Notes: a model not told the origin generated them from the letters alone. Positions 15,793 to 63,156 are shown, counted from the stretch's first letter. The stretch: 64,000 bases of DNA from Mizuhopecten yessoensis (GCF_002113885.1 NW_018407085.1:58766-122765), one strand, 5' to 3'. Translations and numbers: made by a program.

Positions 15793-16305
15793 GTGTGAAC
15801 TTATGCTGTACTTTGGTACATGACATCATGGTGAACTCGTGTGGTACTGACTGTACAAAAGAACGGCAAAATGAAAGTTTGAGTAAACTATAAGGTACGC
15901 GATGAGGAACAACAATTTCTATTAGCTACCATGTATATGTTAGATATATCGGAGCAATGTCAAAACTACGATAGCGTGTGAACGAGACTACACTTACACG
16001 AAAGCTACATGTAGCATGGAATTCAAAAGAACACAACAGTTTATTTAAAAAAACATGATGAAATAAATAGTCATTGTTTCAGAGGAATGCGATGTTATTT
16101 GTTTTCTCATGTGATGTCCAGTAATTACATTATTAAAAATAATATTGTAGTAATGAAGAAGTTCTTACAAAAAAAAAGTATTGAATGGCGATGTGCCTTT
16201 TTTCTTTATTTCATGATCAGCGAGAAAATAAAGGGATTACTATACTTTATTTGATCTGTGAAAGGACATCAACATTAACATCCTCGACTGGTATTTTGCG
16301 AATGA

Positions 16306-16496
16306 AGTAGTGGTGTTTTACCGGTGCCTCCTCCACACATTTTGTGGAGGGTGTGGAGGGTGACCTTTTGACCTAGATATGCATGTATGACGCAATAGGG
16401 GAGGGAAAAACCCGTGGAATGTGTGGAGGTGATACCGGTTAAACAGACCTTAGACCTATATATGCATGTATGACGCAATAGGGGACGGGAACCCAT
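16306..16496 (+). repeat. Left TIR of the Polinton (ends beside an N at 16498); contains two internal direct repeats
   Basis: Reverse complement of 32174-32365 with few mismatches; gacctagatatgcatgtatgacgcaatagggga-like motif occurs twice. Confidence 0.95.
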
Positions 16497-18739
16497 ANGG
16501 TTGTATTTAAAAAACAAGTATTTTCAAAAATGTAATAAAAAAAAATGTGGAGTGATTGAATGTTTTTTTCGTCAATACCTTAGTACATAGGACAGGCTAA
16601 GCTTTAAATACATGTGATTCAAACTCTGTAATCATATTGGTGTAAGGAATGAAATTAAGTTTGTCAAAGTATACAACCTTCCAACCTATACTGTTAAAGG
16701 CATAACGATGTTTAACAAAAGTAAAACTTTAAAACCAAGAAATATACACACAACATTTAGCATTCATAGACAAGATATGCATAGTAAGAGGTAGTTTTTG
16801 AGTATTTAAAAAACAAGTATTGTCAAAAAACTAAAAACCAAGATTTGGAACGGTTAAACTTTTTTCATAAATTTGCATAAAATGTTTTAAAATAAAACTT
16901 TACAAACTTTTTTTTCATCAATTTGCATAAAATGTTTTAAAATAAAACTTTACAAACTTTTTGATGATTCGACTAGAAATTTACATAAAAGCAATAAATG
17001 GTTTAAGGAATAAAGATAGACCAACCAAATTAAATAAATTCCAAATATAAATCTTTCTCAAGTTATGTTTGTAAAAACTTAACAATGTTAGATAAAAACA
17101 ATTACAAGACTTTTATAATCAAGAAATATGTACACAACATTTTGTAGCATAAACAGACTTACACAGTGTGAGGTAGATTATGGGAATGAGTTCTAAAAAG
17201 TGTTTTATCATTTAGTTATCATAAAATGTTTCAAAATTTAACTTTAAACACAAGTATAGTGGATTAAGTACATGGGATGCATTATACAATGATTTGAAAT
17301 AAAACTTTTGATAAATAGATAGTTGATTCAAGTACATAGTGTTCACTCAGCTTTTACTACAAATAAACAACATCTGTTATACCTCACTGAAACATCAATA
17401 GATCCAGTCTACTGAATGTAACCTTTGTCAAACAAAAATTCTAAAGATGTCTAAACTCCTAGATTTCAATATAGCCTAAGACTAAGTCTAGTACAATGTC
17501 TATTCATACCATAGTCAGAACATTTTAACGACATGGGAGTAGGCCTTCCGCGATTTTTAAGGTAATCATTGTGGTTGTTTGCTGTGTAGATATTACAAGG
17601 TACACCATTGCGATAATGAGAAGCTGATCAAGGAGGTTGGTCGTACGACTGGCATGAAATAAAAACACGAACACATAAGCGAATTAGTGAGGATATTAAA
17701 AGATCTTTGGAATGAAAAACAATTCCCCTATGACGATTCAAGGTACACCATTGCGATAATGAGAAGCTGATCAAGGGGCGTTGATATTTCTTGATAATTC
17801 AGGATGAAAAATCATATCGAGGAGAAAGCCTATGTTTTGTTATGTTATGTTATGTAACGTTGAGGGATAACACCAGATTGGAAGGAAATGTCTTTATTTA
17901 ACAATATGTGGACTTTCATACTAACAGTAGGTGATGTAAAGATGGCGATGAGTTAAAATGAACTCGTAAGGTCTCATAGGTATCTAAACACCCTAACAAA
18001 GAGTCGACATTTGGTGTATATATATGGAGACTACACAAATGGCTCAAGGGACTATTAATCGCATAGTCAACGACAAAATCCTTCTGACAAACATACCACA
18101 CAGTAAATTGTTGTCTAGGTACTAAGCAACTCTTCCCTTCAAGAAGATAGGCATGATATGTAAGAATGGGAGGAGGGATAAAACGAAATTAGAGGGAATA
18201 GTTTTACTTAGAAATGTGTTTCCTTCTTTGGTATATATAGTCATTTAACTACGTCAGGTAATTAAGTTACCTGATCTTATACACAACAGCCACCATACAC
18301 CCACAGGTCACTACACAAGTCAATCCCCCACCAATCCAAACAACAAGATAAGTACATTCTATATACATCAAAGCTAGGATTTCCATCTCTACCTACAGTA
18401 CTGATAAATTATTAGTTCTCTGGAAGAGTCAACACTTAAACCGTCTCAGCCTGTCTGAGACAATTTCTCATTTTCGTCGTACAAGTCCAATCAAATGATT
18501 GGAACAATTTCTTTTTTGATTTCAAATAATATAAAAACTTCAAGAGACCCAGTTCAGTTGACTTTTTTATACAAAGTAACCTACAACATTTGTCTGATTT
18601 CAAGATGCCTTAAATGATCTAACTGAAATAATAGCTTTGCATAAGTCAAGTGGAATAGTTGCCAGTCTTGTACTGTCTATATTGCAAGTAAAAAGGTCAA
18701 CACAATTTTTGTAAACGTGTATGGAACTTTATAATAATA

Positions 18740-19720
18740 AAAAAAACACAGTATTTGTAAAACAATTTCAATCAATAAACGATATGGAAAAAGGTTTTTA
18801 CAGTGTGTGACAAGTTTGTTTTAGTATTCATGAAGATTTACAACAACGAAAGTCTTTTCGAGCTAACCCTAACCCTAACCCTAACAGGTATGAGTTAAAT
18901 TAAAGTATTTTGTTAAAGAAATTGACACAAAAGTACCTTGACAAACAACTTTTCATTAGAGATGTTATTCAAAAGTATACTTATTTTTAAATTAAACCTC
19001 TGACAGATGTAAAATAGTTTTAAATGCACAACATTTATAAAACAATTTAAATTAGGAAACGTTATGTAAACAGGTTTTTGCATAGTATGTGACAGGCTGT
19101 TTTAGTATTTATGAAGATTTACAACAACGGAAGTCTTTTCAAGTTAAAATTTTAGCAGGAACGAGTTAAATTAAAGTGTTTTGTTAAAGTAATTGACACA
19201 AAAGTATGATGACGGACATTTTATAACATATTTTTATTCAAAAGTATACCTGCTTTCAAATAAAACCTCTGACAGATGTGAGCTAGTTAAAAATTCACAG
19301 CATTTGTAAAAACCATTTTAATCAGAAAACTTAACGAAAATTGATTTTTACATAGTATGTGACAGTTTGTATTAGTTTTTATGAAAATTTACAACAACGA
19401 AAGTCTTTTCAAGTTAAATTATTCACAGGTATGAATTAAATTAAAGTATTTTGTTAACGAAATTGACGCAAAATTATTTTGACACACTTTTCATATCATA
19501 TTTTATGCAAAAATGTACCTATTTTTAAATAAAATCTCTAACAGATGTGAAAAAGTTTAAAATTCTCAGCATTTGTAAAACCATTTTAATCAACGTCGAG
19601 GATTTACAAAATTTTCAAGTTACCCTTTCAACAGGTATGAGTTAAATTAAAGTATTTGGTTAAAGAAATTGACACAAAATTATCTTGACAAACAACTTTT
19701 CATAAGATATGTGAAAACAG
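18740..19720. repeat. ~270-280-bp degenerate tandem repeat (about 3.5 copies) in the Polinton non-coding arm
   Basis: gaagatttacaacaacgaaagtcttttc...ttaaattaaagtattttgttaaagaaattgacac recurs at ~18832, ~19113, ~19383 and partly at ~19600. Confidence 0.85.
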
Positions 19721-20632
19721 TGAACACCAACAACAAATATAAGATACAAGATACATCAAAATCGATTTGACTTTTGTCATATTCCCATCTCTAACCAGAA
19801 CACTGATAACTTCTAAGTTTACAAACAAAATCTGTCAACATGTTAGGTGTTAGCATAAAAATGGAAACAACATATACCATTTATTTAACGATTGTTAGAA
19901 TCCAACAATTGAAAAAGAGTTTCAAAAGAAAATAATGCTTTGTTCTTACACTTTTTCTCGGAGTAGTACAGATACAACAGTAAAGTAAGTAAATTTGGTT
20001 ACTAAACGAATGTGATAAAGTCTCCGTTAGAATACATATGTAAATAGATGTATACACTTCTCTGTATTGAGATATCTATAGAAACAAACAAAAGTTTCCT
20101 ATTTGAATCAATATGTGTTAATAAAATAAAATAATCTTTAAAAAGGGGAAAAATAAAAAATTAGCATTTGACAAAGTGTATGACAAAGAAAAGTTCTAAA
20201 TACGCTGTGATCGAAATTTACGCTACAATTTAGCTAATTGATATTTAACTACTTTAACAAATGGATGTTTTTGTTGATACCTTTCAAAAGTATAATTGCT
20301 TTCGGCTCATTTTATTTGTTTACCTGATATGGCTACTTTTATGACGTTAGTACTGAACATGTATATTAGTATAAAATGCAAATAATTGTCGGTTGCAGAT
20401 CTTATGGGGTTGGGTTTTTTTTAATCGTAAAATATTCTTAAGTGTTCGATGCTGGTGATAAAATACCTAATGAGACAAAAAAGAATCCTATGCCGTAGAG
20501 ATGGTTAACCATTAAAACCGAGAACAAGTTACTTACTCATCCATTGCATTTGAGTTGACAGAATGGAATACTCACTAGTCTACAGGCGGATACCAGAGTA
20601 CTATATAGAAAACTCAAGGTACGAAGTATCAA

Positions 20633-20872
20633 ATGGAAGCTCTCGAGAAAATTGCAAAATTCATGCTGAATGGCTTGCTCAACATCTTGCAACATGATTT
20701 TGAGACATTTAGAAGACATCTGACTATGCTAAGACAAGTCATTTCTCCGGCTATATCTTTAACAAGAAAACGAAATTGTCTTTTGAGGCATCATAGTTTA
20801 CTGCCTAGATTATTAAGGGAGTATTATCTCAATCAAACGACCATTCTTGAAATTCGAAACGCAGACGAATAG
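20633..20872 (+). CDS. Small Polinton ORF resembling the conserved basic family ALxEIAxNxLxG...RHxxxLR...SLxRKR
   Basis: EALEKIAKFMLNGLLNIL...RRHLTMLRQVISPAISLTRKRNCL; family recalled from group-1 Polintons; convergent with PolB. Confidence 0.45.
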   Translation: MEALEKIAKFMLNGLLNILQHDFETFRRHLTMLRQVISPAISLTRKRNCLLRHHSLLPRLLREYYLNQTTILEIRNADE

Positions 20873-21335
20873 ATTCGTGTATAACATTTACATTCTATCT
20901 TCGAGTCAATACCACACCGAAAGATTGTACGGACCCATCTTTGGGAGGATGCGATGCGTGGTTGCCAATGATCTTTTTGAGGATTAAGAATAATCAGAAA
21001 TTGTTCCTGAAGTTGAACTAACAGAATATTGTTTGGAAAACGAGGAGAACAGGGTGCCATCCTCTGGCATACCGTAAAATGTTGTAAGAGCGTAAGTCAC
21101 TGGTGCAGACTTGAAAATCTCGTAAACTTGACCTGCTACACATCAGATAGTATCCCTTCATACAACTATATATTTACAAGAAAAAAAAAGAAAAAAAAGA
21201 AAAAAGTTACAAACTAAATTTTATTTTGCAACCATACAATAAAGTATACTTCTCTAAAAATGTACAATAAATAAGTAAAATGCTTGTATTTTCGACTTTT
21301 CGACAAGTATGACTTTGTAATCATTAAAATTGTAT

Positions 21336-24321
21336 TCAATGTATATCGTTTTTTATTTTATAATGACCATGTGCCCACGTTTCACCATTTGGTGTTACGT
21401 GGCGTTTGTCGTCAAAACTACAGAGGCCGGCTTTTTTCTGATGGTGTATACGTGCAAGTCATGTCTGTCACTTCTGATGGAATTCATATCACACATTATC
21501 GTTTTAGATTTAAACAGACATTCTAGATACATGTCGTGACGTAAATCATGCACGATGGTACATTTATTGATACCCTTAGCTATCTGTTTTGACTTAAGGT
21601 CAGAGCTGTTATCGTAAGCATAGGAATACATTTTAGGTCTCAATCCGAGAAACTCTTGTAAAATCTTCCCACCTAATTCGTCTTTAAACTTTCCCGGTAT
21701 TTTTTTGTTTGTGACGTCATAGATTGGATGATTGGTAGGATAATTGGATAGATCGAACAGATGTTAGTCTTCATGTAGTGTTTCGTACAGGTCTGAAACA
21801 TCCGATATTTCATACATCAAACTGTCAGTGTCAGTCAATAACAGACGTATGTTCTGGTATTTAGATAGCACGTGGTTGTAGTGGAAATCGTACATGATAC
21901 ATTTAGAGAGATCCAAAATACACTGACCGACATATACAGGTTTGTCGAGTATCAGTACGTTCTCCATGGTTTTACCAAAGACAGAGTTATTCATTTAATT
22001 TAAAGAAATCTTTTTCGAATTCGGAAGATGTTTCCCTTCTATTTTGACTGTTAAAATCAATGTAAGACTTCAACCACGTATACTGTCTAAACTGTTAAAC
22101 TCGGTGAATTTTTGTCAGTTTTATTCCTAACTCTAAGTACAGTTGTAAGTTTCTGTAATGACATATATATTTCGTCTTGTTTTCGAGCGAGGGTACGAGT
22201 TTAGGGGTGGCAACGCGTCCCCACAGTTTGCTGTCGGTATGTTTGGGACTGGGGTGTAATTCTTTCCATAATTCTTTGCTATGAGGGGATAACATTGCAT
22301 CGGGAATGACTTTAGTTTCCGGAGCGAGCGGATAGTCCGAATGGAGATTGTGTAGTTTTGACGGGTATTCTAGATCTACTTCTAAGACGTAACCCGTATC
22401 ACTATCTATAGGTATGTTTTGAACATCAAAATGTTCCACATTGTCAACCCACTGGACACGCCACCCCGTACCCCGCTCTCAAAAAACAGATAGATATATG
22501 AATCAGTTAGTAATTCTAAACTAACCCCGGTCATTTTGAGTGCAGCACTTCATGCAAGTCCATGACTCGTATAAAAATGAGCCGGATCTAACTCGTAATA
22601 GTTCATGCACATGGTTCTAAAATTTTCAAACACATCTGCTAGGAGAAGAACGTCGGTCTTCAAATAGAGATCATGATATTCTCCTAAATTCCTAATGTTT
22701 AGTGTATTCCAAACACTCTGCGCATGCTCATAATCTGTTTTGCTAATGTTTGATTTGCTCAGTTGACTGGTACAGGCTGACTTTGATGGTAAAGATGTTT
22801 CGTCAAATCTGTCTACACTGTCTACATACTCGTATGGGTAAACACATAAAGACTACACATGTGACATTTTTTGCTAGTTTGAAACTTCCACTCATTTTCT
22901 GGAGACATGACTTAAGGTTCTACATGTTTTAAAATGTCTTTGATTTCTTTTTCTTCTTCCAATATGTGTTCCAAAAAAGTTTTACTCACGTTTGGTCCGC
23001 GATAAATGTCGGGGGGTTTTGTATACTTTTCGTCTACGCTAACGACCTGATAACCAAACCCACAAGGTTCGAATTTTGTACTTCGAGTCGTACTCGATTG
23101 TTTTGGATTGGGTAGACATGTATCCATTCTCTGAGCGAACGTTTCAAAATCAGCATAGATGACAAATGGTACTTTTAACTGTTTAGCAAAACTGACAAAT
23201 TCTAATATGTCTTCACCTTCATCTGGAAGTTCCACATGTTTAGGATCGTGTTTGGAACAGTATTGAATGCGATTGTCTTATAAGTCATTTCTAGTAAACC
23301 CCTGAAGACAATAATGACAAAAATAAGTCTTATGTTGTGTTGTTTTAGTTCAAGATAAAAACTTATCAAGGTTCCTAATGAGACAACAATGACTCTTCCC
23401 ACCTTCTTTTAAATACAATAAATTGACATGATGACGCACTTGCCGTATTTTTGTGACATACATGGGAAATATTTCCTTATCCTCGTATCCAAACACATTT
23501 ACAGAAATGTCATTTTGTTTTTCAAACTTTTCTAATTGCAACATTGTTACGGTATAAACATTCCCAGTCATATCCAGTTCCTGTTCATAAGACATGAAGT
23601 TTGTCACTCGTTCTTGAACCTGATGATTGGGATGGAGAGACGCCAGGACAGACCCTAAGAACACTTTTCGTCTTTGTTGATAACGTTGATGAGATGAGAA
23701 AATTGAAACGTAGCCGGTGTTGGTAAGTAGGACGAACCACTTAAAGGTGAGTAGTTGGTAAAAATATATAGCTTTTGCTTCGAAAATGTGGATAGGATTG
23801 TTGTTTGTTTCCTTCTTTATCCTCCTTCTCCAGTTCTACTTGAATGCAGATGCACCACTTAATGCCGTGTAAAGAATGACACTGCTCTGTAATATGTTTC
23901 ACTACCTCCTCCCGCGTACTGCTAAAGAAAGTTAGTAAATCAGCATTGTCACCATCATCAGGGGAAACAGATCTCACATTGGCCGAGCCATTCAAGCTGC
24001 TTTCATCAGAAAACTGATGCATAGACCCTGGTGACTGTACGGGAGACAGTACATGAGAAGGTCCAGATATGGGAGGCAATGTGGACATGGGAATGGTTTC
24101 TCGTGAGCTGCCAAATGTCTCTTGAAATTGTCTAATCTTCTAATACGTTTATTACAAACGTAGAATTGGTAGTCCTCAGAGTCGGCCAATCGTACCTTTT
24201 TAGGAGGTGGTTGGTTTTCTTTGTTCTCTCCGAGTGCCTTTTTTAGCTTTCGTAATCATTCCGCTACAACATCGTCGGGGAAGTCTCGACATAGCTGCTC
24301 TATAGATGGTAGTTCGGCCAT
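21336..24321 (-). pseudogene. Protein-primed family B DNA polymerase (pPolB), fragmented
   Basis: Across frames: N-terminal C2H2-like finger (VCNK...FKRHLAAHEKPFPCPHC), FEKQNDISVNVFG, ExoI YADFE, VYPYEY, YLKTDVLLLADVFENFR, GVRGG, GYVLEVDLEYP, NNSVFGKTMENV, TDTDS, GKFKDE, LRPKMYS, KGI and terminal DDKR...GHY, stop at 21336; many stops, frameshifts and deletions. Confidence 0.95.
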
Positions 24322-24533
24322 GGCAGCCGATTACACTATGAGCTGATGTTATCGAAAGCTGTAGTTATATACACCGTAGAGGGAATGGTGTAATGTTTGA
24401 AGAGGTTATATATAGGCATGCTGCAATTGTGTGGACAGCTCTTATATCCACATAGCATGATGGGCATCTATACATTGTGTCTATTTATAGATGTGATGTA
24501 AAGTTGAAGGAAAATTTAGATCTTAAATGATAA

Positions 24534-24815
24534 TCATTTACGCTTGACGGATTTGTGTAAATTCTTCAGAAAACATTCCGGTGTATCTTCTACTGCTAAC
24601 TTCCCTCCCTTCTGTTGCTTATCCGGTCTGATTTCTCCATCCTCATCAGTTTTTTGTTGGTCTGTTTGATTTATTTCTTTAGTGTCGGTAGATTTTAGAT
24701 TGTGATTTGTATGTTCTTCGTTTTGTGTCTGTTTTTCGTTTTCATCAGAGGTGTTATCATCTTCGATTAATCTGCCATATCTAGTCTTTGTTATCAAGAC
24801 GAGTTATCTTGCCAT
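24534..24815 (-). pseudogene. Polinton small ORF (MAR*LVLITKTRYGRL..., charged low-complexity middle) with a premature stop at codon 4
   Basis: ATG at 24815 is in frame with ORF 24534-24797; N-terminus resembles recalled MAxKxVLV...YxxL Polinton ORFs. Confidence 0.45.
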
Positions 24816-24823
24816 TGTTGATA

Positions 24824-25071
24824 GGTGTTGATAAATATTGGTAAAACTCAAAGTAAAGCTGGGAATCTCTTTGGTGTTATATTTTCAGCTAACACTTTTC
24901 TGTTTAGATACAGTCTTTTTATCCGCATCAATCAGACATCGGTATGTTATCCATGACTGTATTTTATATGATTTCTGTTAATAATTGTAATTGTTCTCTA
25001 GTAAGCGTGTTTATGATGAGCGTCTGCTGATGTCGAGGTGCAGAAAGCATAAAGTCGAGAAAATATTTCAT
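24824..25071 (-). pseudogene. Degraded Polinton small basic protein (MKYFLDFMLSAPRHQQTLIINTLTREQLQLLTEII*NTVMDNIPMS)
   Basis: ATG overlaps the ATPase stop (ATGA); pattern QLxxLxEIxxNxxxxNIP; internal stops; absent from the ORF track; 3' end approximate. Confidence 0.5.
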
Positions 25072-25751
25072 TTTTTTGGTTCATAGACGATTGGATCCTC
25101 TCCGGGCAATATCCTGGTGCGAAGTGGGTGAAGTTCTGTCGGACCATCCACAATATTCAACGATGGGCCGTGTGGACTGACGTCGACAAAAAGATATCCA
25201 TATCTTTTAGAAACGGCAGAAAGGTAACTCTGTCTAAAATATTCTAGCCGTTTGGGAAACATTTGTCTTCCCAATGTCTCGATTTGTGCCTGATCTCTAT
25301 AATTTCTAAACAGGATAAAGTAATGAGCGTTTAAACTTAAAGTGCGCATGACCTGCCCCTTCTGAAATACGTTCTGTACTAAAAATATGACCGTCACATT
25401 TTGTGACCCTATGCAAAACATTTTCATGAGGTGTACGGAATTAGATCCTTCTATCAAACAGTCGTCTAGTACGATTATCTTGTGTTTATCTGTAACAGAA
25501 GTCCATTCTTCAAACTGTGTTTCGTCTAAGATCCCTTTAACGAAGGTAATTTCTTTGATATTACTTTTAAGTTCATCAAACATAGGTTGCCAAGTATCGT
25601 AACAGATCATAATCTTAGCCGTAGGCTGACTAAACAAACCATCGGCATGCTCTAATATTTGTTTCATCAGAAATGTTTTACCACTTCCAGAGCTACCTGC
25701 TAACTGTATCGTGGCAGGGCAGACAATGGGAACCAGACTTGTCTGTGACAT
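25068..25751 (-). CDS. FtsK/A32-like genome-packaging ATPase
   Basis: Walker A GSSGSGKT, Walker B IIVLDD, VQNVF, RTLSLNAHYFILFRNYRD, YGYLFVD; open 227 aa. Confidence 0.93.
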   Translation of the reverse strand: MSQTSLVPIVCPATIQLAGSSGSGKTFLMKQILEHADGLFSQPTAKIMICYDTWQPMFDELKSNIKEITFVKGILDETQFEEWTSVTDKHKIIVLDDCLIEGSNSVHLMKMFCIGSQNVTVIFLVQNVFQKGQVMRTLSLNAHYFILFRNYRDQAQIETLGRQMFPKRLEYFRQSYLSAVSKRYGYLFVDVSPHGPSLNIVDGPTELHPLRTRILPGEDPIVYEPKK

Positions 25752-25789
25752 GATTCAAAATGAAAACAGGTAAGTGAAAGTTCGATGTT

Positions 25790-26203
25790 TTATTGGTATT
25801 CTTGACAACATGATTGGTACCCATCACCAGTTTGAAAACAAAACGGAAAGGACTTATAGATATAATCATATACAAATTCATCGTTATGCGTATAATCATC
25901 ACTAATTACATTAACTATAGACTTGAGAGATACATTTCTACATCTATTAAGCAAATAAAATAAACAACATTGACCACACACGTTAGATCTAACACTCTGT
26001 AATCGTGTTACATTAAACGCTGTACATTTTGAAAGTGAAAAGTATTTTGGTGGATGGCAATAACTGTCAAAAAAATCCTTTTTTGTTGATGATTCCATAA
26101 AATAGGCCACCCAATGTCGTCCCGGTTGATGGCTTTCGTCGGTATTGACAATAAATCCGGCGGGAAATTGTTCTATATGTATTTCGATCATGTGCATATA
26201 CAC
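25790..26203 (-). CDS. Adenain-like cysteine (maturation) protease; N-terminus probably frameshifted
   Basis: IVNTDESHQPGRHWVA (His), FFDSY (Asp), RLQS (Gln), VCGQ (Cys). Confidence 0.92.
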   Translation of the reverse strand: MYMHMIEIHIEQFPAGFIVNTDESHQPGRHWVAYFMESSTKKDFFDSYCHPPKYFSLSKCTAFNVTRLQSVRSNVCGQCCLFYLLNRCRNVSLKSIVNVISDDYTHNDEFVYDYIYKSFPFCFQTGDGYQSCCQEYQ

Positions 26204-27752
26204 CTATGTTAAAGGGACATCACGGTGAAGTAACTTTATTTTTTGTCTTTTTTTCAAATACTACATAAACATATCAAGTGAGACTCCTTATGGAAAATAC
26301 CGTTCGGATTTGGCTGAAATAGATTCATAAAAATGATTAAATCTAAGAAAATCATCGGTATTTCTACCTGTCTGACCAACGGATTTCCCTCTACTAGCGC
26401 ATGCGCATAGCACACCATTTCTTTGTAAACAAAATGACTGACCATGTGAAGTAAGCGAAAGAAAAGTGTTGTACCATGTCAGCTACGAAACGAAAAGTTG
26501 GCAAATGGTCAAAGATAGCGCAAGGAGTACGGAATCATTATTGCAGGTGGGCAGTATTCAAAGGAGAAAATAACTGCCGTAGCAGTTAGTACGGTGCATG
26601 TATTCTTTCGGATAGCCGGTTAAGCTGAAATGGAATCGACAGAAATGCTAGCGCTGTTTATGTTATGAATAAATATCTAAAACTATTAAGCTCGCTAGTA
26701 TCTTTGTCTGAGTTTGAACACAGATGAACTTAGTTTAATATGTTAATGGGCATGTATTGGAGAGAGTTTACTTTGTGTTTCTATAATTATACAGCGGTTT
26801 ATGCGAGAGGAAGGGATAAGTGACTGGTTAGTTTGATTTTTCCATGAGGCCCTCCAAGGGATAACTGTTGTGATGGCCCTCGGCGTATTTTCTGGGTCAC
26901 CGAGATACGTGTTATCGAAGTCCGTGGATTTACATAATTTATAATATTACCGGGTTCAATAAAATGGTATGATTTAATTATATTGCTGAATTAAACGATT
27001 ATTTTTGTTTTTACATGCAAGATTTAAATTAGTACTAATATGAATACCCGGCCTCCTCTGCCCCGGCAATATATAAAAAAAAATCAGAAAGGTTTGTCCC
27101 TTGGTGTAGGGAAGGTGTTTAGCCCCGTACCATCTGTACCGGCCACATTCCGGTACTAAATTCAATATATATTTAAATATATCTACTTTATGTTTATGCC
27201 TATTATCATTGTTGACATTTAATTGTAAATGTATGACGGGAGAAGGCTGTGATAAATTGTAAAAACTTGTGCCCCATCCCTTGTTTAATTTTATTGGCAA
27301 CAAATTTATGTTTAAAGCTAAATAAATTTAAATTCTGAACATTGGCAAGTGTGCAATTAACTTCTAATGATGAATAATTACTGTTCAATAAGTTTGAATA
27401 CGGACTTAGAAATCATATAACTTGGTTTCATAGTGCGGTAAGAAGTTGCAGTTGCCTGACGGCCCCTCTCTGGGGGCCCCTTTGGAAACCGTTTCATCTC
27501 GCTCGCACCACTTGTGTTTACTGCCTAGTCAGGTGACGTTATCGGCGCTATTCTTAGCAGGGCTTTCCCGAACAATTCAAGTGGTCAAACTGGACATTTT
27601 GAACGGACTATGAATATGGGGATAGCGTGGTAACATAGGTGGAAGTGCATACAATACATACATTCATTAAAAAAACGCCTTTTCACGTTATGTCCCTTTA
27701 AGCTCTTTCATGATAAAATCACAATTAATAACGCAACGAAGTTGATTGGTAT

Positions 27753-29031
27753 TCATGGCTTTAAAATGTCTCTTGCAGCGTTGATTTCAAAATAGCCAGG
27801 GTACTCAGCATAAACGATGCAGCTGATGGTTTTAGACAGTGTACTTCCAAATGTGACTTCCAGTCTGACGTTTCCTTGTTTTAATAAGGTAAGATATTGA
27901 TTTCCTTCAAAAATAGGCTCCAAATTAAATGTGTATAACGAATAACCATTTGAAATGTTCTGCCTATGAATATCTAATCCACAATCGTATAACCATCTTC
28001 CTGTTGTTTTAAACATGTTCCTTAGGACTGGAATGGTGGTCTGACTGGTGGTGGCTTCGTAATCTGTTTTTATGATATTACCTCCTACGGGTATTCCGTC
28101 CACATAGAGACCAATGGATGTTACATTAAATAGTTTGAAGAACCATGGGTTTTGATTGTATGCTCCCGTGATGGCGGTTGCATCGACAAACCCAATGGTT
28201 ACAAAATTTGGTCTCATTCCTTGAAATATGTTATCATATGTAAAACTGGTTCCTCCGGCGGCACACTTTCTGTAAATGGATATTTTGCAGTAGTTGTATG
28301 ACGGCAGGGTTCACTTTGGCTTTAGCGATGCGTAGTCTAATATCTTCAAACTCGATCTTGTAGTTGGGGGTTTGTTCGCCGGAAAGTAAGCAAAACTCTG
28401 GCTTTGATCTGTACATCTTTACATTTACGTTTACTTGATTGAGTAAATATCTATCCATTCTAAATAGATCGTGAAATATGGGGCCTTCCAAATCGACAAC
28501 TTTGCAACCTTCGAATAATTCGGCCCTTTCTAGTAAAGCTAGATTGTTACCCGTTCTCACATCTGTATCATTCATCTCTCCATCATTATTTTCATGCCAT
28601 AACTGTGTTGTTAACTGTGATGTTTTAGCATCATTTCCATATTTCAATAATGTTTGAATGTATGCCTTGCATGCATAGTTAGCAGTTGTAGATATCACGG
28701 TTCTTCCTTGAAGTGTGGCATCCACTTGTGAAAACAGAGCAGGTAACAAAAATTGGACATGTCCAACGTCTTCAGTAGAGCTTATGGCAGCTCCATCCGC
28801 CCTTGTTATCTTTATTTTAGCGTAAACTAGCGAATTTTTCATGTCGATGTATTCCATATTATTTTGACAGGAAACGACGAATTTTATGGGCGAATCTCCA
28901 GCCATTTGTGATATCGGTAGTACGTCTTGATAGTATATGTTTTCAACGGCTGTCTGTGTGGGTGGTAATTCAAAAAGCTCCAGTTGTGAAGGTTGAGCTT
29001 CTCTGAAAAAGACTTTGTTTATTGTAGCCAT
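27753..29031 (-). pseudogene. Major capsid protein (hexon-like double jelly roll), split by frameshifts near 28230-28290
   Basis: SQLELFELPPTQTAVE, LFSQVD, DLFRMDRYLLNQV; shifted-frame AKYPF and DNIFQGMRP lead into ORF 27753-28217 (NPWFFK, GYSLYTFNL, GNVRLEVTF, CIVYAEY). Confidence 0.9.
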
Positions 29032-29477
29032 GATGATAGTAAGTGATTCTTAGTAGATTTCTTACGTTTCTGTGTAGACTTCCGCTTTTGTGTAGGCTTA
29101 CGTTTCTGTGTGAGCTTCCGCTTTTGTATAGGTGTACGTCTCTTAATCTGTTTTCTTGTCTTAGATCTGACTTTTCTTGATGGTTTTCTCTGAGAGGTCT
29201 GTACTCTTTGACGTTTCCTGCTAGAATGTGACGGTGTCAATTTTCTCTTCCTTTTTAATTCTGACTTGACTTGGTTTCGTATCGGTAAGGCTTTCTCTCC
29301 GTCACTGCTATACTTGTCGATGGGAATGATGAATTCAGCCGTGTTGCCTGATATTGCCCCTCCCCTTTGTTTTACATCTTGCATATCTGTATAAGGATTG
29401 ATCTTACCATCCGTAACCTTTCGATAATATTGTAACCACTTACCCACAATGGGCACGTATAAGTTAGAAACATTCAT
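29019..29477 (-). CDS. Basic Lys/Arg-rich putative virion core (DNA-condensing) protein
   Basis: Lies between penton and hexon; LYVP...KWLQYY N-terminus; QRGG; C-terminal half very K/R-rich with TQKRK repeats. Confidence 0.65.
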   Translation of the reverse strand: MNVSNLYVPIVGKWLQYYRKVTDGKINPYTDMQDVKQRGGAISGNTAEFIIPIDKYSSDGEKALPIRNQVKSELKRKRKLTPSHSSRKRQRVQTSQRKPSRKVRSKTRKQIKRRTPIQKRKLTQKRKPTQKRKSTQKRKKSTKNHLLSSWLQ

Positions 29478-29899
29478 CTGTAAAATGGGTAGGCTTTAAA
29501 CTGAAGTGTAATCGTTGATGGTTTCTTCAAGAATGAAGCAACGTTACCGTCACTGTCTTTTATAGATATTTCTATATCTCTGATTTCTGACTTCGCTACA
29601 GGAACGTACTGAGGAGTGTCAAGTGTTTGTCTCCAGCTTGCAACTTTCTGAGCTTTCACCATTCGAAGTAGATTCTGCTTCTCACCGTCGATTATGGATT
29701 CTCCAACAGTATCGCAATGTATGTATAAATTTTCTCTCGACTTTGTATTACTTGTCGTTACACATATGTCAACGAGTGCTACATTCCATGTACCATTCAG
29801 AGTAATGGGTGATTTTAGTTGACAGCGAAAATGGTATGGTTTGTTGTCGGGGAAGTAGTCGAGATTCTTAATACTGTTAATGATCACGTAGTGTGCCAT
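29474..29899 (-). CDS. Minor capsid protein (penton-like single jelly roll)
   Basis: YVIINS...YFPDNKPYHFRCQL...LNGTWNVALVDI, LYIHCD, LLRMV, YVPV...IEISIKD, ITLQFK; intact 141 aa. Confidence 0.85.
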   Translation of the reverse strand: MAHYVIINSIKNLDYFPDNKPYHFRCQLKSPITLNGTWNVALVDICVTTSNTKSRENLYIHCDTVGESIIDGEKQNLLRMVKAQKVASWRQTLDTPQYVPVAKSEIRDIEISIKDSDGNVASFLKKPSTITLQFKAYPFYR

Positions 29900-30717: not shown

Positions 30718-31113
30718 TTTCTGTAAAGAAATATAAATGTGACGTTCAGAAAATGTTAAAATTTAAAAGTATCAATAGAAGCATGCTCGTTTACACACAA
30801 TTTAATTATTTAAATATACATACTGATAAAATGTTATTAAAATTATAATAAATAAGACAAGTTGTACAATCAGTTAACATTTACAATACATTGGTTAACG
30901 AATACATACTTAAGCTGTTGTCTTAAAAGTCTCCACATAAGTGAACAAAAAAGATAAAGGTTACGGTTTTATAAAGCGACTCTCTACACGAGACATAGAT
31001 TGAATCATTTCGTCAATCTTTTTTCTTCTCCATAGTTTTTTCAGTTCAGTATTTCTCCATTCTAAGCTAGACACATTTGTAACATATTTGTTGACAGGGC
31101 TTCTTCAAAATAT

Positions 31114-31332
31114 CTATTCTATTCTGTCTTCACTATCAAGCATGACACAGTCATGTCCTTGCTGGTTAGCTTGACCCTCCACACATCCTGCACATACAAA
31201 CAATTTCGATATGACGTCTTTCACGCTTGATGCATAAGCTAGACATAGTAAGTTTTTCACAATCTTCTTATAATCTTTTTCTTCAATGTGGTTTCTCATA
31301 TATGAATGAAGTCTCTCCTCAAATATATCCAT
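31114..31332 (-). CDS. Small Cys/His protein with CxGCxxxxxNQxxHxC motif; probably continues past the stop through frameshifts
   Basis: CAGCVEGQANQQGHDC; similar motifs recalled from Polinton accessory ORFs. Confidence 0.5.
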   Translation of the reverse strand: MDIFEERLHSYMRNHIEEKDYKKIVKNLLCLAYASSVKDVISKLFVCAGCVEGQANQQGHDCVMLDSEDRIE

Positions 31333-31359
31333 TATAAATTAGCACTATACTGTGTAACC

Positions 31360-31655
31360 TTAGACGTGTAGGGGTATAACCATTTGTAAATACACACAAT
31401 CTGTCGACCACTTTTCAAGTTCGATTTCGACGGAATCGTAGGCTATCCAGGACCTTAACTGTACTCCACACATGAAACAGGTGACTTTATCGCTATGTCT
31501 TGAATAAAAAAAATCCGTTCGTTTGGAGTCTGTCGTATTTGTTGGGGCCAGTCCTTAAACGTTTGTAATCGATCCTCACATTGAATCATGGACTGGTATG
31601 CTGGTCGAATGTGATATGAAGTATGACGGATACAATCTGTTGTAATATCTGACAT
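31360..31655 (-). pseudogene. Single BIR-domain (IAP-like) protein, frameshifted
   Basis: First frame EDRLQTFKDWP; after a shift near 31510, FFYSRHSDKVTCFMCGVQLRSWIAYDSVEIELEKWSTDCVYL, matching BIR consensus with the Zn-ligand His replaced by Leu; stop at 31360-31362. Confidence 0.85.
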
Positions 31656-32173
31656 GTTAATGTATCAAATCACAAACACCTTGTAAACTTTCCGATAGAA
31701 ACGGTATCTTTTAAAATAGTCTCCTGCTATTTGTATACTCTTCCCGTCTTCTTTTTTCACGATGATTTCTTGTGTAATTCCAAGACGACAGTCTTCCTTA
31801 CTCTGTGATATGCTTGTCAGCGTAATATCTTCCTTGATTATATGGTTGATAATCTATTGTGCCATTTGTGGAGACTCTAAATGTTTACCGTATATACACA
31901 TAAGGTTGCATCACTGCTATTTCAACTCACTGTGTATAGAAGTGTGACATAATCCCTCCACACATCTTTTTTTTCCTGGACTGTGTATAGAAGCCTCTTC
32001 ATATGTATAAGGTTATTTTTAAATCTATGTCGCTCTCGCCGTGGACATGTTCGGTCTTGCATGATCCCCTCCACAATTACGGTAAAAACATTTAACCTCC
32101 ACATATATTATGTGATATAATCCTTCACACATTCTTTCCTATTGTGTTGCACATTAATCCCTCCACACATTCC

Positions 32174-32365
32174 ATGGGTTCCCGTCCCCTATTGCGTCAT
32201 ACATGCATATCTAGGTCAAAGGTCTGTTTTACCGGTATCACCTCCACACATTCCACGGGATTTTCCCTCCCCTATTGTGTCATACATGCATACCTAGGTC
32301 AAAAGGTCACCCTCCACACCCCTCCACAAAATGTGTGGAGGAGGCACCGGTAAAACACCACTACT
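32174..32365 (-). repeat. Right TIR of the Polinton
   Basis: Reverse complement of 16306-16496; ends ...cactact then the TSD gaatga. Confidence 0.95.
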
Positions 32366-35300
32366 GAATGACATTATGATATGCAAACCCCCATGGATCT
32401 GTCAGAAGCAGACTATAATGTTTAAAGAGTGTAGGTATAGGTCAGACTTGACCTTGACATACATATATGTAGCAGCTATATTTAAAATTACATTTTATTG
32501 AATTTAAGTGAATAAAACTGGATGAGGGCTTAAAGTCTCTCTATAGGTCCATATGAACAAATGATTAAAAAATAGTTTATAGGAGTGTCAATAACAGCAT
32601 TATTAAACAGTCTTATTGTGTTTTTCACGTATCATAGATTGTTTCTTTAAAATATTCATCAATTAATATTTCACAACGCCCATAATTGTTTGAACAATAA
32701 ACACACGTACAGGTAGATTGTTCAACACATCTACTACCTTAAATGCGTTTCTCCTTAACTGCGTGTTACATCGGTGTTTTTAAACATTTTGTGGGTGTGA
32801 CCTTGATTGAGTTCCTTCATTTATATTAAACGTTAATAGATTGGAAGTGCCTCTGTCATCAAATAATTTGTTAATTATTTCAAAAACGGTTATCCCTTTC
32901 ATCCTGCGGTGCTTCAATATTGGATTTGTAGTACTTTCAGACGCTCTCCGTAGGAAAGTTCGTTCCCTCTTTGAATCATCAAACGATGGTACGACAATAG
33001 CATGTCCTTTATGGCATTCTGTCTTTGTTTATACTCATATTGACACACGAAACTATTTAAAAGAATCAGTACACGTGCCTGATTCCCAAGGCTCTTGGGT
33101 TTGTTCTCGGTGAGTTGGTTCCGTCGGTTTCTCCCTGTTTCTGTTGATAGAACTTCGTCATGCTTTATCATTTGCTGTACGCCGGGGTTCACGCCTCAGA
33201 AATCGTGATCATTTTCAGAACACGACATGCGTGTTGTTTCGCTATCATGTCTGAGTTTCCCTTTGTCGGTGTGTTACGACCATTTGTTACAGTTGTGCCT
33301 GTGGTTCTAATGGACTATTCGTACTAAAAACCTTTTACGTTTTAACCACTTTAACGGTGCTGTGAACAAATGACATGTGTGACAAAATGGCATTTTTAGA
33401 AAACGCATTCTTCTCCGGATCACGTGATTGCACTTTGTTTTATTCGGATTGGATTGTGTTAATGATGTTTTCCGTTTTGTTTCATTCTCCTTAGTTTCCG
33501 CTTTTGCTTCGAACGTTACATGTTACTTTGTCCTTCCTGTTGTGTCGACAGTAGTGATGATTTTCATTATTATTCATCATATTTCACTAAATAAAACGTA
33601 GATCTATAAACTCTAGACACGCATGAATGAAAATTTCAAAGGAATGTCGATGATGAAATACCAAACCAAGGTAACACTAAAACAAGAGTGAAAGTATTAC
33701 TGACGAACCAAGTCCACAATATAACGACGCTCCGTAACGGCACCGTTTCTTATACCGCACGTGGCACCCGTCAGGACGTCTCTGGTCAAATCCGGAATTT
33801 AGATCAGCAGTGATGCTGGACACAGATAGAGTGCATATATGTTATAATGATATATCCTATACAAATCAGGGCATGATGATAAATGTATACACACTATAGC
33901 GTAGAGTAAAGCTTCACTTTAGAAGAGAGCAACGCTTGTTTCTTTAACACCGTATTCACTTATTGAACTTACTCAGTCAATAGGGCATAGACTGGCCCCA
34001 GTTTTACGAGCACGCCTTAATAGAACGAAACCCTACATTTCAAGCTTATCGATAGGAGAGCCTTGCTGAAGGAAAACGAAAATTAAAACCGTACAGAAAT
34101 CCTTTAAGTTGATGAACGCTCCTTAATCTAGGACATTAAATGATACTACGAAGGGAAGGAAAAGGTGATGATCGTTACATTTAAGTCGTAACGTTTGTCA
34201 GTCAGAGACTTTTGTAGTGAGTTTACATTTATCGTAAAACCGTAAGAAAATGCCATTGATTTTTGTCGTGGGGTTACACATATTGTAGACATATTGTAGC
34301 ATAAAGATCCTTAGCGAAGTGACCATTATTGTCAAACTAAGGTAAATATCAGGATAGCAAATAGCTAAGTTTGTTATATCTTTCAACTTCTCGAGGATAA
34401 TTCAGATGCGGGTAACACTCGAAATGTCTGTTAAAGACAAACCATCATCAGACTCGGTATACCTGAAGTGGAATCAAATGTTACAACCTTATACCACAAA
34501 GCTCCCTTTTGGCAGAGAAAAACGAATAACTTCTTAAACTATTGCGTAATTAAGGAAAAACCATGTTTATTTCAGGGCTTATACCGTTAATACGAAACTA
34601 AAACAAAAACGTGCACTTTGCATATTTCGCGAAACCGATTTATGCACTAAAGTGCACACTGTTTTCCTTCCTTTGGTATATACCAAATGACTTCAAAACA
34701 TTATTTATGTTTATTTTTTATGATTTTAGTTTGAAGATACAGACAAAATTTTATAGTTCATAGTTGATGATGAATATTTATTCATTTTCAATAAAAATAA
34801 AAATAAAAAAAGGTATGCACAAAACACAACATTACGGTTCAACTTTATCACTGAGTAACTTCAACCAATCAGAAATTAGAATTACAATCGTATAAATACT
34901 GCGCCAAACGATGCCTTATACAACGTCACTACTTTTTGTATTGTCTTTGTTTTCTAAGCTTTACAATATAACCTGAAAAAGTCCATCAATGGGCAAATAG
35001 CTAAAATGAAACTGTTATGCGATGACTTTAGGGTAATGGTGCAGTGTGCTTGTACAATCGACATGTCAGCAATATGGCTGATCAGTATGACGTCATGAAA
35101 CTCGAATATAGCAACTTCCAAGTACACTGGTCTGAGCTGCATATTAACTTTATATTTTTTCCTATATTAGCAATAAATGTGACCAAAAATAATAAAAGTC
35201 CTTTGCCGGTTTTTTTTTGAGATTCATGAAACCTAGCCTGTAGGATTCATTTTACCCCGACGTAGCCGATACCGAATCCAATAAACACTGACTTATCTCC

Positions 35301-63054: not shown

Positions 63055-63156
63055 AATTTACAAGACCGACAACAGATAGAGGTAAAATGTGATGCTAGAA
63101 CAGAAAGACTGAGGTCATCAGGACAAAGACTGTTGTCCGAGTCCCTGGGAGTAAAG
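63055..63156 (+). CDS. TCEANC2: TCEANC2 coding exon 4 (3' boundary uncertain: 63150 or 63156)
   Basis: gttatag|NLQDRQQIEVKCDARTERLRSSGQRLLSESLGVK, similar to recalled RPSIEVRSDPKTESLRKNAQKLLSEALELK. Confidence 0.8.

What the first reader, a model, noticed from the sequence alone, without database searches (positions are those of the whole stretch)
16300..32371. Fully bounded endogenous Polinton/adintovirus with TIRs, 6-bp TSD and a complete virion gene set
Seen: AGTAGT/ACTACT ends, ~190-bp TIRs, exact GAATGA duplication, and co-oriented genes for integrase, penton, core protein, hexon, protease, ATPase and pPolB. Known: these are Polinton/Maverick hallmarks. Inference: a single integration about 800 bp downstream of a GPCR stop, from an ancestor able to form virions; this may be an undescribed family in this host.
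Basis: partly seen in the sequence, partly recalled or inferred. Interest (0 to 1): 0.8.

Follow-up and report, generated by a model that had tools for sequence, protein, structure and literature searches.

The report
Dead Maverick/Polinton provirus in a scallop
This is an ordinary, mutationally dead copy of a Maverick/Polinton virus-like transposon, complete at both ends and integrated just downstream of a receptor gene in what looks like a scallop genome; such elements are already known to be very abundant in bivalves.

Summary
A 16,060-bp element (16306-32365) has 191/192-nt terminal inverted repeats (about 96% identical), AGTAGT/ACTACT ends and an exact GAATGA duplication. It lies 791 nt past the stop of a class-A GPCR's last exon.

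All recognisable genes are on the minus strand, in the canonical Maverick order.
- Shown by tools: rve integrase (Pfam), a single-jelly-roll penton (pLDDT 94.5; best folds a PBCV-1 capsid chain and the mavirus penton), a double-jelly-roll major capsid protein (Foldseek E about 1e-15) and pPolB (relatives carry PF03175).
- Weaker: the clan-CE protease (sub-threshold hits plus His/Cys motifs), the ATPase (generic P-loop only) and the "core" protein (a very basic ORF in the PW position).

The copy is dead. pPolB needs at least 20 stops or frame changes. The capsid gene has two frameshifts, the integrase one stop, and the protease one nested insertion. The penton, basic-protein and ATPase ORFs are open.

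Nearest relatives are scallop proteins. The kind is well known, so interest is low to moderate.

The parts
15113..15508 (+). Neighbour: last exon of a class-A (rhodopsin-type) GPCR, covering TM6-TM7 and the tail, including the stop codon
   Evidence: Pfam 7tm_1 at 35.6 bits against a cutoff of 30.5, matching profile positions 204-260 of 260. CWAP and NPVVY motifs are present and an AG acceptor context lies just upstream.
16300..16305 (.). Left copy of the 6-bp target-site duplication, GAATGA
16306..16496 (.). Left terminal inverted repeat. It starts AGTAGT and contains two tandem subrepeats of about 84 bp.
16497..20539 (.). Left arm with no detectable coding signal. It is AT-rich (27-33% GC) and includes a 270-bp tandem repeat (18733-19592, with traces to 19712) and a 50-bp duplication (16860-16962). 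The single N at 16498 lies at its outer edge.
   Evidence: The lower bound is 52 breaks against 52.9 +/- 4.2 in shuffles on the minus strand, and 57 on the plus strand. Other evidence: TRF, composition, and no Pfam hit for its longest open piece.
20540..24255 (-). [quoted passage not shown] The outer bounds are approximate.
   Evidence: A 127-aa piece has 158 relatives with E down to 1e-30. Of 50 aligned relatives, 16 hit Pfam PF03175, best E 1.3e-11. TDTDS and YADFET motifs can be read in other pieces. At least 20 breaks are needed to traverse the span, against 44.0 +/- 4.1 for shuffles.
24256..25067 (-). Spacer between the ATPase and pPolB with only a faint coding signal. It may hold the start of pPolB or a decayed small gene in the position of PZ in vertebrate Mavericks.
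   Evidence: The lower bound is 6 breaks against 9.4 +/- 1.8. There are no family hits.
25068..25751 (-). P-loop NTPase ORF of 227 codons, open, with Walker A (GSSGSGKT) and Walker B (VLDD). It occupies the position of the Maverick packaging ATPase.
   Evidence: The ORF is. Only generic P-loop hits were found: Pfam nSTAND3 E 0.004 and Pox_A32 E 0.059 restricted to the P-loop; PDB; PHROGs.
25790..27756 (-). Adenain-like (clan CE) cysteine protease gene, interrupted once by a nested insertion of about 1.5 kb. The 5' bound is inferred.
   Evidence: Pfam Peptidase_C5 E 0.014, below its cutoff. PDB phmmer gives the ASFV S273R cysteine protease at E 0.0016. GRHW and CGQ motifs are visible. For the insertion: no coding signal; a short inverted pair with TTAA/TA flanks; chance gives such a pair in 5/300 shuffles and a TTAA-ended one in 0/300; direct reading.
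27753..29031 (-). Major capsid protein gene (double jelly roll; 'F54H12.2-like' in genome annotations). It has two frameshifts and no in-frame stop.
   Evidence: It covers residues 1-440 of the natural scallop protein P0001 at 88% identity, spread over three frames. The AF2 model of P0001 with 90 relatives has pLDDT 84.3. Foldseek matches PBCV-1 Vp54, SGIV MCP, Sputnik and mavirus MCPs at E 1e-15 to 1e-12. BFVD gives adintovirus, MELD-virus and virophage capsids.
29019..29477 (-). Open ORF of 152 codons for a very basic protein (pI 11.6; 42% K+R in the C-terminal half; 18/36-bp coding repeats). It is the positional equivalent of PW and a candidate DNA-condensing core protein.
   Evidence: no Pfam family
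29474..29899 (-). Penton (minor capsid, single jelly roll) ORF of 141 codons, open and full length
   Evidence: Relatives are 140-141 aa. A profile search finds 3,764 representative clusters. AF2 of the window's own ORF gives pLDDT 94.5, all-beta. The only folds with TM about 0.65 are PBCV-1 capsid chain 6ncl_a6 (E 2e-5) and the mavirus penton 6g41. The gene lies one gene upstream of the MCP, as described for PX (PMC4028283).
29884..30762 (-). Retrovirus-type (rve, DDE) integrase gene with one in-frame stop. The rve core domain lies at about 30217-30462.
   Evidence: Pfam rve 51.5 bits against a cutoff of 32.6. PHROGs transposase families at E 3e-8. Break count.
30763..32173 (-). Right-end accessory region with a weak coding signal. 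It contains a broken BIR (IAP-type) domain at about 31387-31619, split by one frameshift.
   Evidence: Pfam BIR 38 bits against a cutoff of 22.9. PDB phmmer gives NAIP, DIAP1 and cIAP BIR domains at E 4e-9. The N-terminal half of the domain lies in another frame, and all nine weak hits to it are IAP BIRs. The lower bound is 12 breaks against 18.1 +/- 2.4.
32174..32365 (.). Right terminal inverted repeat, ending ACTACT
32366..32371 (.). Right copy of the 6-bp target-site duplication, GAATGA

Best explanation
This is a single, fully bounded, mutationally dead integration of a Maverick/Polinton (polintovirus, order Orthopolintovirales in current usage) in the genome of a pectinid-like bivalve.

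Shown: an rve-type integrase gene is present, and the element has the integration footprint of that enzyme class (inverted termini plus a 6-bp duplication of GAATGA), 791 nt downstream of a GPCR gene. It carries a replication gene (pPolB) and a morphogenesis set (double-jelly-roll capsid, single-jelly-roll penton, a basic protein, a cysteine protease, a P-loop ATPase), packed with overlapping junctions on one strand.

Inferred: the ancestor replicated by protein priming at its inverted termini and could build an icosahedral particle, packaging the DNA with the ATPase and maturing it with the protease. It entered the germ line and was inserted by its integrase.

Since then, or in part before, the copy has decayed.
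- pPolB needs at least 20 stops or frame changes.
- The capsid gene has 2 frameshifts.
- The integrase has 1 stop.
- The protease carries 1 nested insertion.
- The BIR accessory gene has at least 1 frameshift.
- The three small ORFs (penton, basic protein, ATPase) remain open, which is what chance allows at this level of decay.

The element now does nothing of its own; it is a genomic fossil.
For: Termini, TIRs and TSD.

The published Maverick signature matches point by point (PMC8097293): the (AGT)2//(ACT)2 end motif, perfect 6-bp TSDs, mean size 16.9 +/- 1.7 kb (here 16,060 bp), TIRs of 46-1,447 bp, module order integrase, minor capsid, PW, major capsid, protease, and 96% of copies degraded.

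Gene by gene:
- Integrase: Pfam rve 51.5 bits.
- MCP: 88% identity over all 440 residues of a natural scallop protein, whose model is a double jelly roll.
- Penton: and its position as in PMC4028283.
- pPolB: and motifs.
- Protease and ATPase.

Junction overlaps are 16, 4 and 13 nt. The coding signal is calibrated against shuffles, and break counts come.

Host context: the GPCR exon and minisatellites on both sides. The nearest relatives are from Mizuhopecten, Pecten and Argopecten, then other bivalves.
Against: - The ATPase is not assigned beyond P-loop NTPase.
- The protease hits are below curated cutoffs.
- pPolB is identified through relatives and motifs, not by a direct family hit of any window piece.
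- About a third of the element (the left 4 kb and the nested insert) has no recognisable content.
- Continuity across the N at 16498 cannot be checked from the window.
- The host species is inferred only from the nearest protein hits.
Confidence: 0.9

Rival explanations
1. Defective at entry. The copy that integrated here already had a ruined pPolB, and perhaps the non-coding left arm. It was propagated in trans by integrase and replication functions of intact relatives, as a non-autonomous or defective-interfering-like derivative. Only part of the damage arose in place.
For: Decay is uneven. pPolB has 5.4 breaks per kb (a lower bound), against 0.96 per kb over the 4,161 nt of integrase plus morphogenesis genes; one-sided binomial p = 3e-4 for the wide span and 2e-3 for the core. 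The TIRs differ by only 3.1%, which predicts roughly ten breaks in pPolB if decay were uniform. The left 4 kb has lost all coding signal. Hosts in which every copy has a fragmented pPolB are reported for vertebrates (PMC8097293).
Against: The TIR-based expectation rests on 7 events and has a wide error. The pPolB bounds are approximate, and unrecognised inserts would inflate the count, although no further inverted-pair signature was found. Gene conversion between the two TIRs or between copies could equally produce the unevenness. No sister copy was examined.
Confidence: 0.35
2. Assembly chimera. The left TIR with its flank and the rest of the element come from different loci or copies, joined at the N at 16498.
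For: The N lies two bases from the inner edge of the left TIR, and the 4 kb that follow have no coding signal.
Against: The two outer junctions carry the same 6-bp duplication, as expected of one insertion event. It is a single N, like two others elsewhere in the window, not a gap run. The right TIR ends at the matching position with unique sequence inside. The element's length is typical (PMC8097293).
Confidence: 0.05
3. Nearly intact, recently active element whose apparent frameshifts are indel errors of the assembly.
For: Most inferred breaks in pPolB can be modelled as frame changes (9-16 of at least 20), and the two breaks in the capsid gene are frameshifts.
Against: At least 4 in-frame stops in pPolB and one in the integrase cannot be indel errors. 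There is also a 1.5-kb nested insertion, 3% divergence between the TIRs and complete loss of coding signal over 4 kb. Neighbouring small ORFs in the same assembly are clean.
Confidence: 0.04
4. Host-domesticated remnant. The open penton, basic-protein and ATPase ORFs are kept by selection for a host function.
For: Three adjacent or nearby ORFs are uninterrupted although the element is otherwise dead.
Against: At 0.96 breaks per kb, ORFs of 423-681 nt stay open by chance about half to two-thirds of the time each. The capsid gene between them is frameshifted. None of these exact ORFs is a called protein in the 15-billion-protein collection.
Confidence: 0.05

Closest known systems
Mavericks of vertebrates (Barreat & Katzourakis 2021, PMC8097293)
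   Same: The 5'-(AGT)2//(ACT)2-3' end motif, perfect 6-bp TSD, size of about 16-17 kb, TIRs within the 46-1,447 bp range, the module integrase, minor capsid, PW-position gene, major capsid, protease, plus ATPase and pPolB. Most copies are degraded, with pPolB fragmented.
   Different: The host is a bivalve mollusc. All genes lie on one strand, which in that study is reported for Xenopus tropicalis only. A BIR-domain accessory gene sits at the integrase end. There is a 4-kb non-coding arm beyond pPolB. The capsid protein is only about 440 aa.
Polintons / 'polintoviruses' as defined by Kapitonov & Jurka and Krupovic, Bamford & Koonin 2014 (PMC4028283)
   Same: [quoted passage not shown]
   Different: Nothing of kind. 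The sequence family is distinct: no Pfam model recognises the MCP or penton, and the nearest named relatives are 'uncharacterized protein F54H12.2-like'.
Adintoviruses (Starrett et al. 2021, PMC8502044)
   Same: Animal-associated, with the same hallmark gene set (PolB, integrase, hexon, penton, adenain, ATPase). BFVD structural neighbours include 'Adintovirus sp.' and 'MELD virus sp.' capsid proteins.
   Different: Adintoviruses were defined from apparently free-ended, intact contigs and by Alpha/Beta PolB clades. This copy is integrated and dead, and its PolB clade was not tested because reference genomes of animal viruses were not to be fetched.
Endogenous Orthopolintovirales/PLV regions of bivalves (bioRxiv 10.1101/2025.04.19.649669)
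   Same: Same host class and same kind of element. That survey counts 107,631 viral regions in bivalve genomes, 58.5% assigned to Orthopolintovirales, and notes that their ORFs are often annotated as eukaryotic proteins, as here.
   Different: That work is a catalogue. It does not, as far as I read, describe this locus, its exact boundaries or the BIR cargo.
Mavirus and other virophages
   Same: The MCP and penton folds are close (6g44, 6g41, 3j26), with an rve integrase, a cysteine protease and an ATPase.
   Different: Virophages depend on giant viruses of protists. There is no sign of that here, and the host is an animal.

Membership tests
Maverick/Polinton (Orthopolintovirales-type element) | [quoted passage not shown] | tested here: met
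   A window piece has 158 relatives, and 16 of 50 aligned relatives hit PF03175, best E 1.3e-11. TDTDS and YADFET motifs appear in other pieces. No window piece hits PF03175 directly. The gene is broken at least 20 times.
Maverick/Polinton (Orthopolintovirales-type element) | Retrovirus-like (rve, DDE) integrase gene | tested here: met
   Pfam rve 51.5 bits against a cutoff of 32.6. The gene has one in-frame stop.
Maverick/Polinton (Orthopolintovirales-type element) | Terminal inverted repeats with (AGT)2//(ACT)2 or (AG)3//(CT)3 ends | tested here: met
   TIRs of 191/192 nt at about 96% identity, with AGTAGT and ACTACT ends. The motif is as given in PMC8097293.
Maverick/Polinton (Orthopolintovirales-type element) | 6-bp target-site duplication | tested here: met
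   GAATGA on both sides.
Maverick/Polinton (Orthopolintovirales-type element) | Double-jelly-roll major capsid protein | tested here: met
   The gene is 88% identical to natural protein P0001 over its full length. The P0001 model has pLDDT 84.3. Foldseek matches Vp54, SGIV, Sputnik and mavirus MCPs at E 1e-15 to 1e-12, probability 1.0. The fold was shown on the natural relative, not on the window's frameshifted copy.
Maverick/Polinton (Orthopolintovirales-type element) | Single-jelly-roll penton encoded next to, or one gene from, the MCP | tested here: met
   The window's own 141-aa ORF gives pLDDT 94.5. The best folds are PBCV-1 capsid chain 6ncl_a6 (E 2e-5, TMq 0.65) and the mavirus penton 6g41 (TMq 0.66, probability 1.0). 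It lies one gene upstream of the MCP.
Maverick/Polinton (Orthopolintovirales-type element) | Adenain-like (clan CE) cysteine protease | tested here: inconclusive
   Peptidase_C5 E 0.014 at 15.5 bits, below the cutoff of 21.3. ASFV S273R protease E 0.0016. His (GRHW) and Cys (CGQ) motifs occur in the right order.
Maverick/Polinton (Orthopolintovirales-type element) | FtsK/HerA- or A32-type genome-packaging ATPase | tested here: inconclusive
   Walker A and B motifs are present and the position is right, but all hits are generic P-loop; Pox_A32 at E 0.059 covers the P-loop only.
Adintoviridae (proposed) | PolB falls in the Alpha or Beta adintovirus clade | not tested
   This needs reference sequences of animal viruses, which I was not to fetch, and the window's PolB exists only in pieces.
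Adintoviridae (proposed) | Evidence of a free, intact viral genome | tested here: not met
   The copy is integrated (TSD, host flanks) and its genes are broken.
Polinton-like viruses (PLVs) | MCP, penton and ATPase without the pPolB plus rve pair | tested here: not met
   Both pPolB and rve are present.
IAP/BIR proteins (for the accessory gene) | BIR zinc-binding domain | tested here: met
   Pfam BIR 38 bits against a cutoff of 22.9. PDB BIR domains at E 4e-9. The domain is split between two frames. No RING or second BIR was found.
Non-autonomous cut-and-paste DNA transposon (for the nested insert) | Terminal inverted repeats flanked by a TTAA (piggyBac-type) or TA (Tc1/mariner-type) duplication | tested here: inconclusive
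   The inverted termini match at 11/12 nt with TTAA on both outer sides. Locally, chance gives such a pair in 5/300 shuffles and a TTAA-ended one in 0/300. However, about two such pairs are expected by chance over the whole element. There are no other copies in the window.

The most novel reading that the evidence does not exclude
The BIR (IAP-type) gene is genuine cargo of this Maverick lineage, not a one-off capture. It would be an anti-apoptotic accessory gene like those of baculoviruses and other large DNA viruses. Mavericks would then be one of the vehicles that scattered BIR-domain genes through bivalve genomes, where IAP families are hugely expanded and mostly as dispersed duplicates of unexplained origin (PMC13159474). 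A second, weaker novelty is that this lineage may have spread as a pPolB-dead dependent of intact relatives.
Probability: 0.2. Interest if true: 0.55.

Novelty: new member of a known kind. Interest (0 to 1): 0.25.

Why it matters
As a Maverick it adds little. The kind, its termini, its gene order and its abundance in bivalves are all published.

Its use is as a cleanly bounded reference example for a mollusc:
- It has exact ends and a TSD.
- It has a confidently folded 141-aa penton that belongs to a very large, unannotated protein family.
- It gives a structural identification of the 'F54H12.2-like' proteins of bivalve annotations as double-jelly-roll capsid proteins.

Two points could matter more if sister copies bear them out. 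One is a BIR/IAP gene carried inside the element, which bears on how IAP genes dispersed in bivalves. The other is decay concentrated in the polymerase, which bears on whether such elements spread as dependents of intact ones.

Tried and rejected
- Pfam and PHROGs on 30 open pieces gave no direct family hit for any pPolB, MCP or penton piece.
- PDB sequence searches with the ATPase, two pPolB pieces and a 50-sequence pPolB profile gave nothing specific.
- An exact look-up of four window ORFs in the protein collection found none of them.
- tRNA and Rfam scans of the whole window found nothing, so there is no SINE-like or RNA feature in the silent stretches.
- A search for a second copy or fragments of the element elsewhere in the window found none.
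- A search for further nested-insertion signatures in pPolB or the left arm found none above chance.
- I considered and rejected a free viral contig (host flanks and a TSD are present), a PLV or virophage (pPolB and rve are present), and selection on the open small ORFs (chance suffices).
- I gave up on an absolute age, because I have no calibrated neutral rate for this host.

Full report
**1. The observation**

- The left arm (16306-16496) and the reverse complement of the right arm (32174-32365) align over about 191 nt with 6 substitutions and one single-base indel. A 46-nt block is perfect and a 148-nt block is 96% identical (blastn E 1.8e-85).
- The termini read AGTAGT and ACTACT, and GAATGA flanks both.
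- Each TIR contains two tandem subrepeats of about 84 bp.
- The element is 16,060 bp long at 35.6% GC.
- The N at 16498 sits two bases inside the inner edge of the left TIR. It is a single N, like two others in the window. I left it as it is.
- Upstream, the last exon of a rhodopsin-type GPCR ends with its stop at 15508, leaving 791 nt to the TSD. Support is 7tm_1 at 35.6 bits and the CWAP and NPVVY motifs.

**2. What the genes are**

All recognisable coding sequence is on the minus strand. Read from the right end, the order is as follows.

- **Accessory region with a BIR domain.** Pfam gives 38 bits against a cutoff of 22.9. PDB BIR domains of NAIP, DIAP1 and cIAP match at E 4e-9. The first half of the domain lies in another frame.
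- **Integrase.** Pfam rve gives 51.5 bits against a cutoff of 32.6.
- **Penton, a 141-codon open ORF.**
  - The word search found only two unnamed relatives of the same length, so the exhaustive profile search was justified. It found 3,764 representative clusters.
  - With 82 of them as alignment, the window's own ORF folds at pLDDT 94.5 into an all-beta domain.
  - The only structural neighbours with TM about 0.65 are a 167-residue chain of the PBCV-1 capsid (E 2e-5) and the mavirus penton protein. All other matches (TM about 0.3) are generic beta sandwiches. I take this as a single-jelly-roll penton.
- **Basic protein, a 152-codon open ORF.** It has pI 11.6 and 42% K+R in its C-terminal half, with 18/36-bp coding repeats. 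It occupies the PW position of vertebrate Mavericks (PMC8097293). The 'core protein' label is an inference from composition and position only.
- **Capsid gene.**
  - It matches all 440 residues of a natural Mizuhopecten yessoensis protein ('uncharacterized protein F54H12.2-like') at 88% identity.
  - That natural protein, modelled with 90 natural relatives, gives pLDDT 84.3 and pTM 0.85.
  - It matches PBCV-1 Vp54, SGIV MCP, Sputnik and mavirus capsid proteins at E 1e-15 to 1e-12.
  - In BFVD its best match is a bracovirus-borne protein at 30% identity, followed by MELD-virus, adintovirus, adomavirus and virophage capsids. It is a double-jelly-roll MCP.
- **Protease.** It shows GRHW and CGQ motifs, Peptidase_C5 at E 0.014 and the ASFV S273R protease at E 0.0016. 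Both hits are clan CE and both are below curated thresholds.
- **ATPase, a 227-codon open ORF.** It has Walker A and B motifs but only generic P-loop hits.
- **pPolB.** One 127-aa piece has 158 relatives, all fragments because of the tool's length window. Of 50 aligned relatives, 16 hit PF03175, best E 1.3e-11. TDTDS and YADFET motifs are readable in other pieces.

Junctions between integrase, penton, basic protein and MCP overlap by 16, 4 and 13 nt.

**3. State of the copy (counts only)**

I computed a reference-free lower bound: the fewest in-frame stops plus frame changes needed to traverse a span. I calibrated it against shuffles of the same span.

| Span | Breaks needed | Shuffled expectation |
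|---|---|---|
| Integrase | 1 (a stop) | 11.5 |
| Penton | 0 | 4.3 |
| Basic protein | 0 | 4.9 |
| MCP | 1 (2 frame changes and no stop when guided by its nearest natural relative) | 14.8 |
| ATPase | 0 | 7.7 |
| pPolB | at least 20 (4-11 stops and 9-16 frame changes) | 44.0 +/- 4.1 |
| Left arm | 52 | 52.9 |
| Right-end accessory region | 12 | 18.1 +/- 2.4 |

- The protease core is open, but the gene's span holds about 1.5 kb with no coding signal.
  - That stretch is bracketed by an 11/12-nt inverted pair with TTAA/TA flanks.
  - Chance gives such a pair in 5/300 local shuffles, and one with TTAA ends in 0/300.
  - About two such pairs are expected by chance over the whole element, so the support rests mainly on position.
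  - I read it as one nested insertion of a non-autonomous cut-and-paste element, at moderate confidence. I did not excise it or join its sides.
- The left arm has no coding signal on either strand.
- The right-end accessory region has only a weak coding signal.

**4. Uneven decay**

pPolB carries at least 5.4 breaks per kb. The 4,161 nt of integrase plus morphogenesis genes carry 0.96 per kb. The binomial p is 3e-4, or 2e-3 for the pPolB core alone. The TIRs differ by 3.1%.

Either the copy was already polymerase-dead when it integrated and was propagated in trans, or decay and conversion have been uneven in place. The window alone cannot decide; sister copies would.

**5. Comparison with what is known**

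- Barreat & Katzourakis (PMC8097293) report the following for vertebrate Mavericks, and this element matches each:
  - the (AGT)2//(ACT)2 end motif;
  - perfect 6-bp TSDs;
  - a size of 16.9 +/- 1.7 kb;
  - TIRs of 46-1,447 bp;
  - the module integrase, minor capsid, PW, major capsid, protease;
  - 96% of copies degraded, with pPolB fragmented.
- Krupovic et al. (PMC4028283) place the penton gene upstream of, or one gene from, the MCP, as here.
- A recent survey counts 107,631 dsDNA-virus-derived regions in bivalve genomes, 58.5% of them Orthopolintovirales, and notes that their ORFs are often annotated as host proteins (bioRxiv 10.1101/2025.04.19.649669).
- The element is therefore a new member of a well-known kind.
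- The adintovirus label (PMC8502044) is compatible but untested.
- I found no paper linking Polintons or adintoviruses with BIR/IAP genes. A 2026 study of metazoan IAPs attributes many dispersed mollusc duplicates to transposition without naming Mavericks (PMC13159474).

**6. Host**

The host is inferred only from the nearest relatives of the capsid gene: Mizuhopecten at 89%, Pecten maximus at 67-88%, Argopecten at 62%, then ark shells, pearl oysters and mussels. It is probably a pectinid scallop. The species was not determined.

Noticed in passing
window 31387-31619 (-), inside the element between the integrase and the right TIR: A BIR (inhibitor-of-apoptosis type) domain, split by one frameshift, co-oriented with the viral genes. 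No RING or second BIR was seen. I found no paper reporting BIR genes in Polintons or adintoviruses. Bivalve IAP families are greatly expanded, mostly as dispersed duplicates.
   Followed up: partly
within the protease gene's span (see parts; place not given): About 1.5 kb with no coding signal, bracketed by an 11/12-nt inverted pair with TTAA/TA flanks. This is probably a nested non-autonomous piggyBac- or Tc1/mariner-type insertion. There are no other copies in the window.
   Followed up: partly
window 16497-20539: The element's left 4 kb is AT-rich (27-33% GC) and statistically indistinguishable from non-coding DNA on both strands. It has a 270-bp tandem repeat (18733-19592, traces to 19712) and a 50-bp duplication (16860-16962). 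Its origin is unknown; it could be decayed accessory genes, satellite growth or foreign DNA.
   Followed up: partly
window 16362-16491 and 32179-32308: Each TIR contains two tandem copies of a subrepeat of about 84 bp, which may be repeated binding sites. The function was not tested.
   Followed up: no
window 13-548, 1851-2435, 2916-3303; 8563-12372; 13056-14593; 47947-52708; 63139-64000: The host DNA around the element is unusually rich in minisatellites. There is a 17-bp G-rich family, a 28-bp unit repeated 136 times (3.8 kb), a 47-bp unit repeated about 32 times just upstream of the GPCR's last exon, a 41-bp unit repeated 112 times (4.8 kb), and an 89-bp unit that runs off the window end.
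   Followed up: no
window 16498, 43751, 61678: There are three isolated single Ns. One falls two bases inside the inner edge of the left TIR. I left all of them untouched.
   Followed up: partly
proteins P0019, P0033, P0093, P0105, P0110, P0116, P0118: Capsid-protein relatives are deposited as proteins of Sedimenticola or Candidatus Thiodiazotropha MAGs, which are bivalve gill symbionts. Some sit on contigs of about 22.5 kb. These are probably host- or virus-derived contigs mis-binned into bacterial genomes.
   Followed up: no
proteins P0273, P0278, P0284, P0285, P0296, P0304, P0311, P0349: Some members of the penton family carry two to four tandem copies of the 140-aa domain in one protein of 390-660 aa. 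These could be concatenated jelly rolls or gene-model fusions.
   Followed up: no
BFVD hit R9XLG5: The closest viral-library match of the capsid model, and the only one with clear sequence identity (30%), is an uncharacterised protein of Cotesia sesamiae Mombasa bracovirus. This is consistent with a Maverick capsid gene sitting in a bracovirus proviral region.
   Followed up: no
window about 23995-24255 (-): An open piece upstream of the pPolB core has a faint C2H2 zinc-finger-like pattern (Pfam zf-C2H2_4 E 0.067, far below its cutoff). This may be chance.
   Followed up: no
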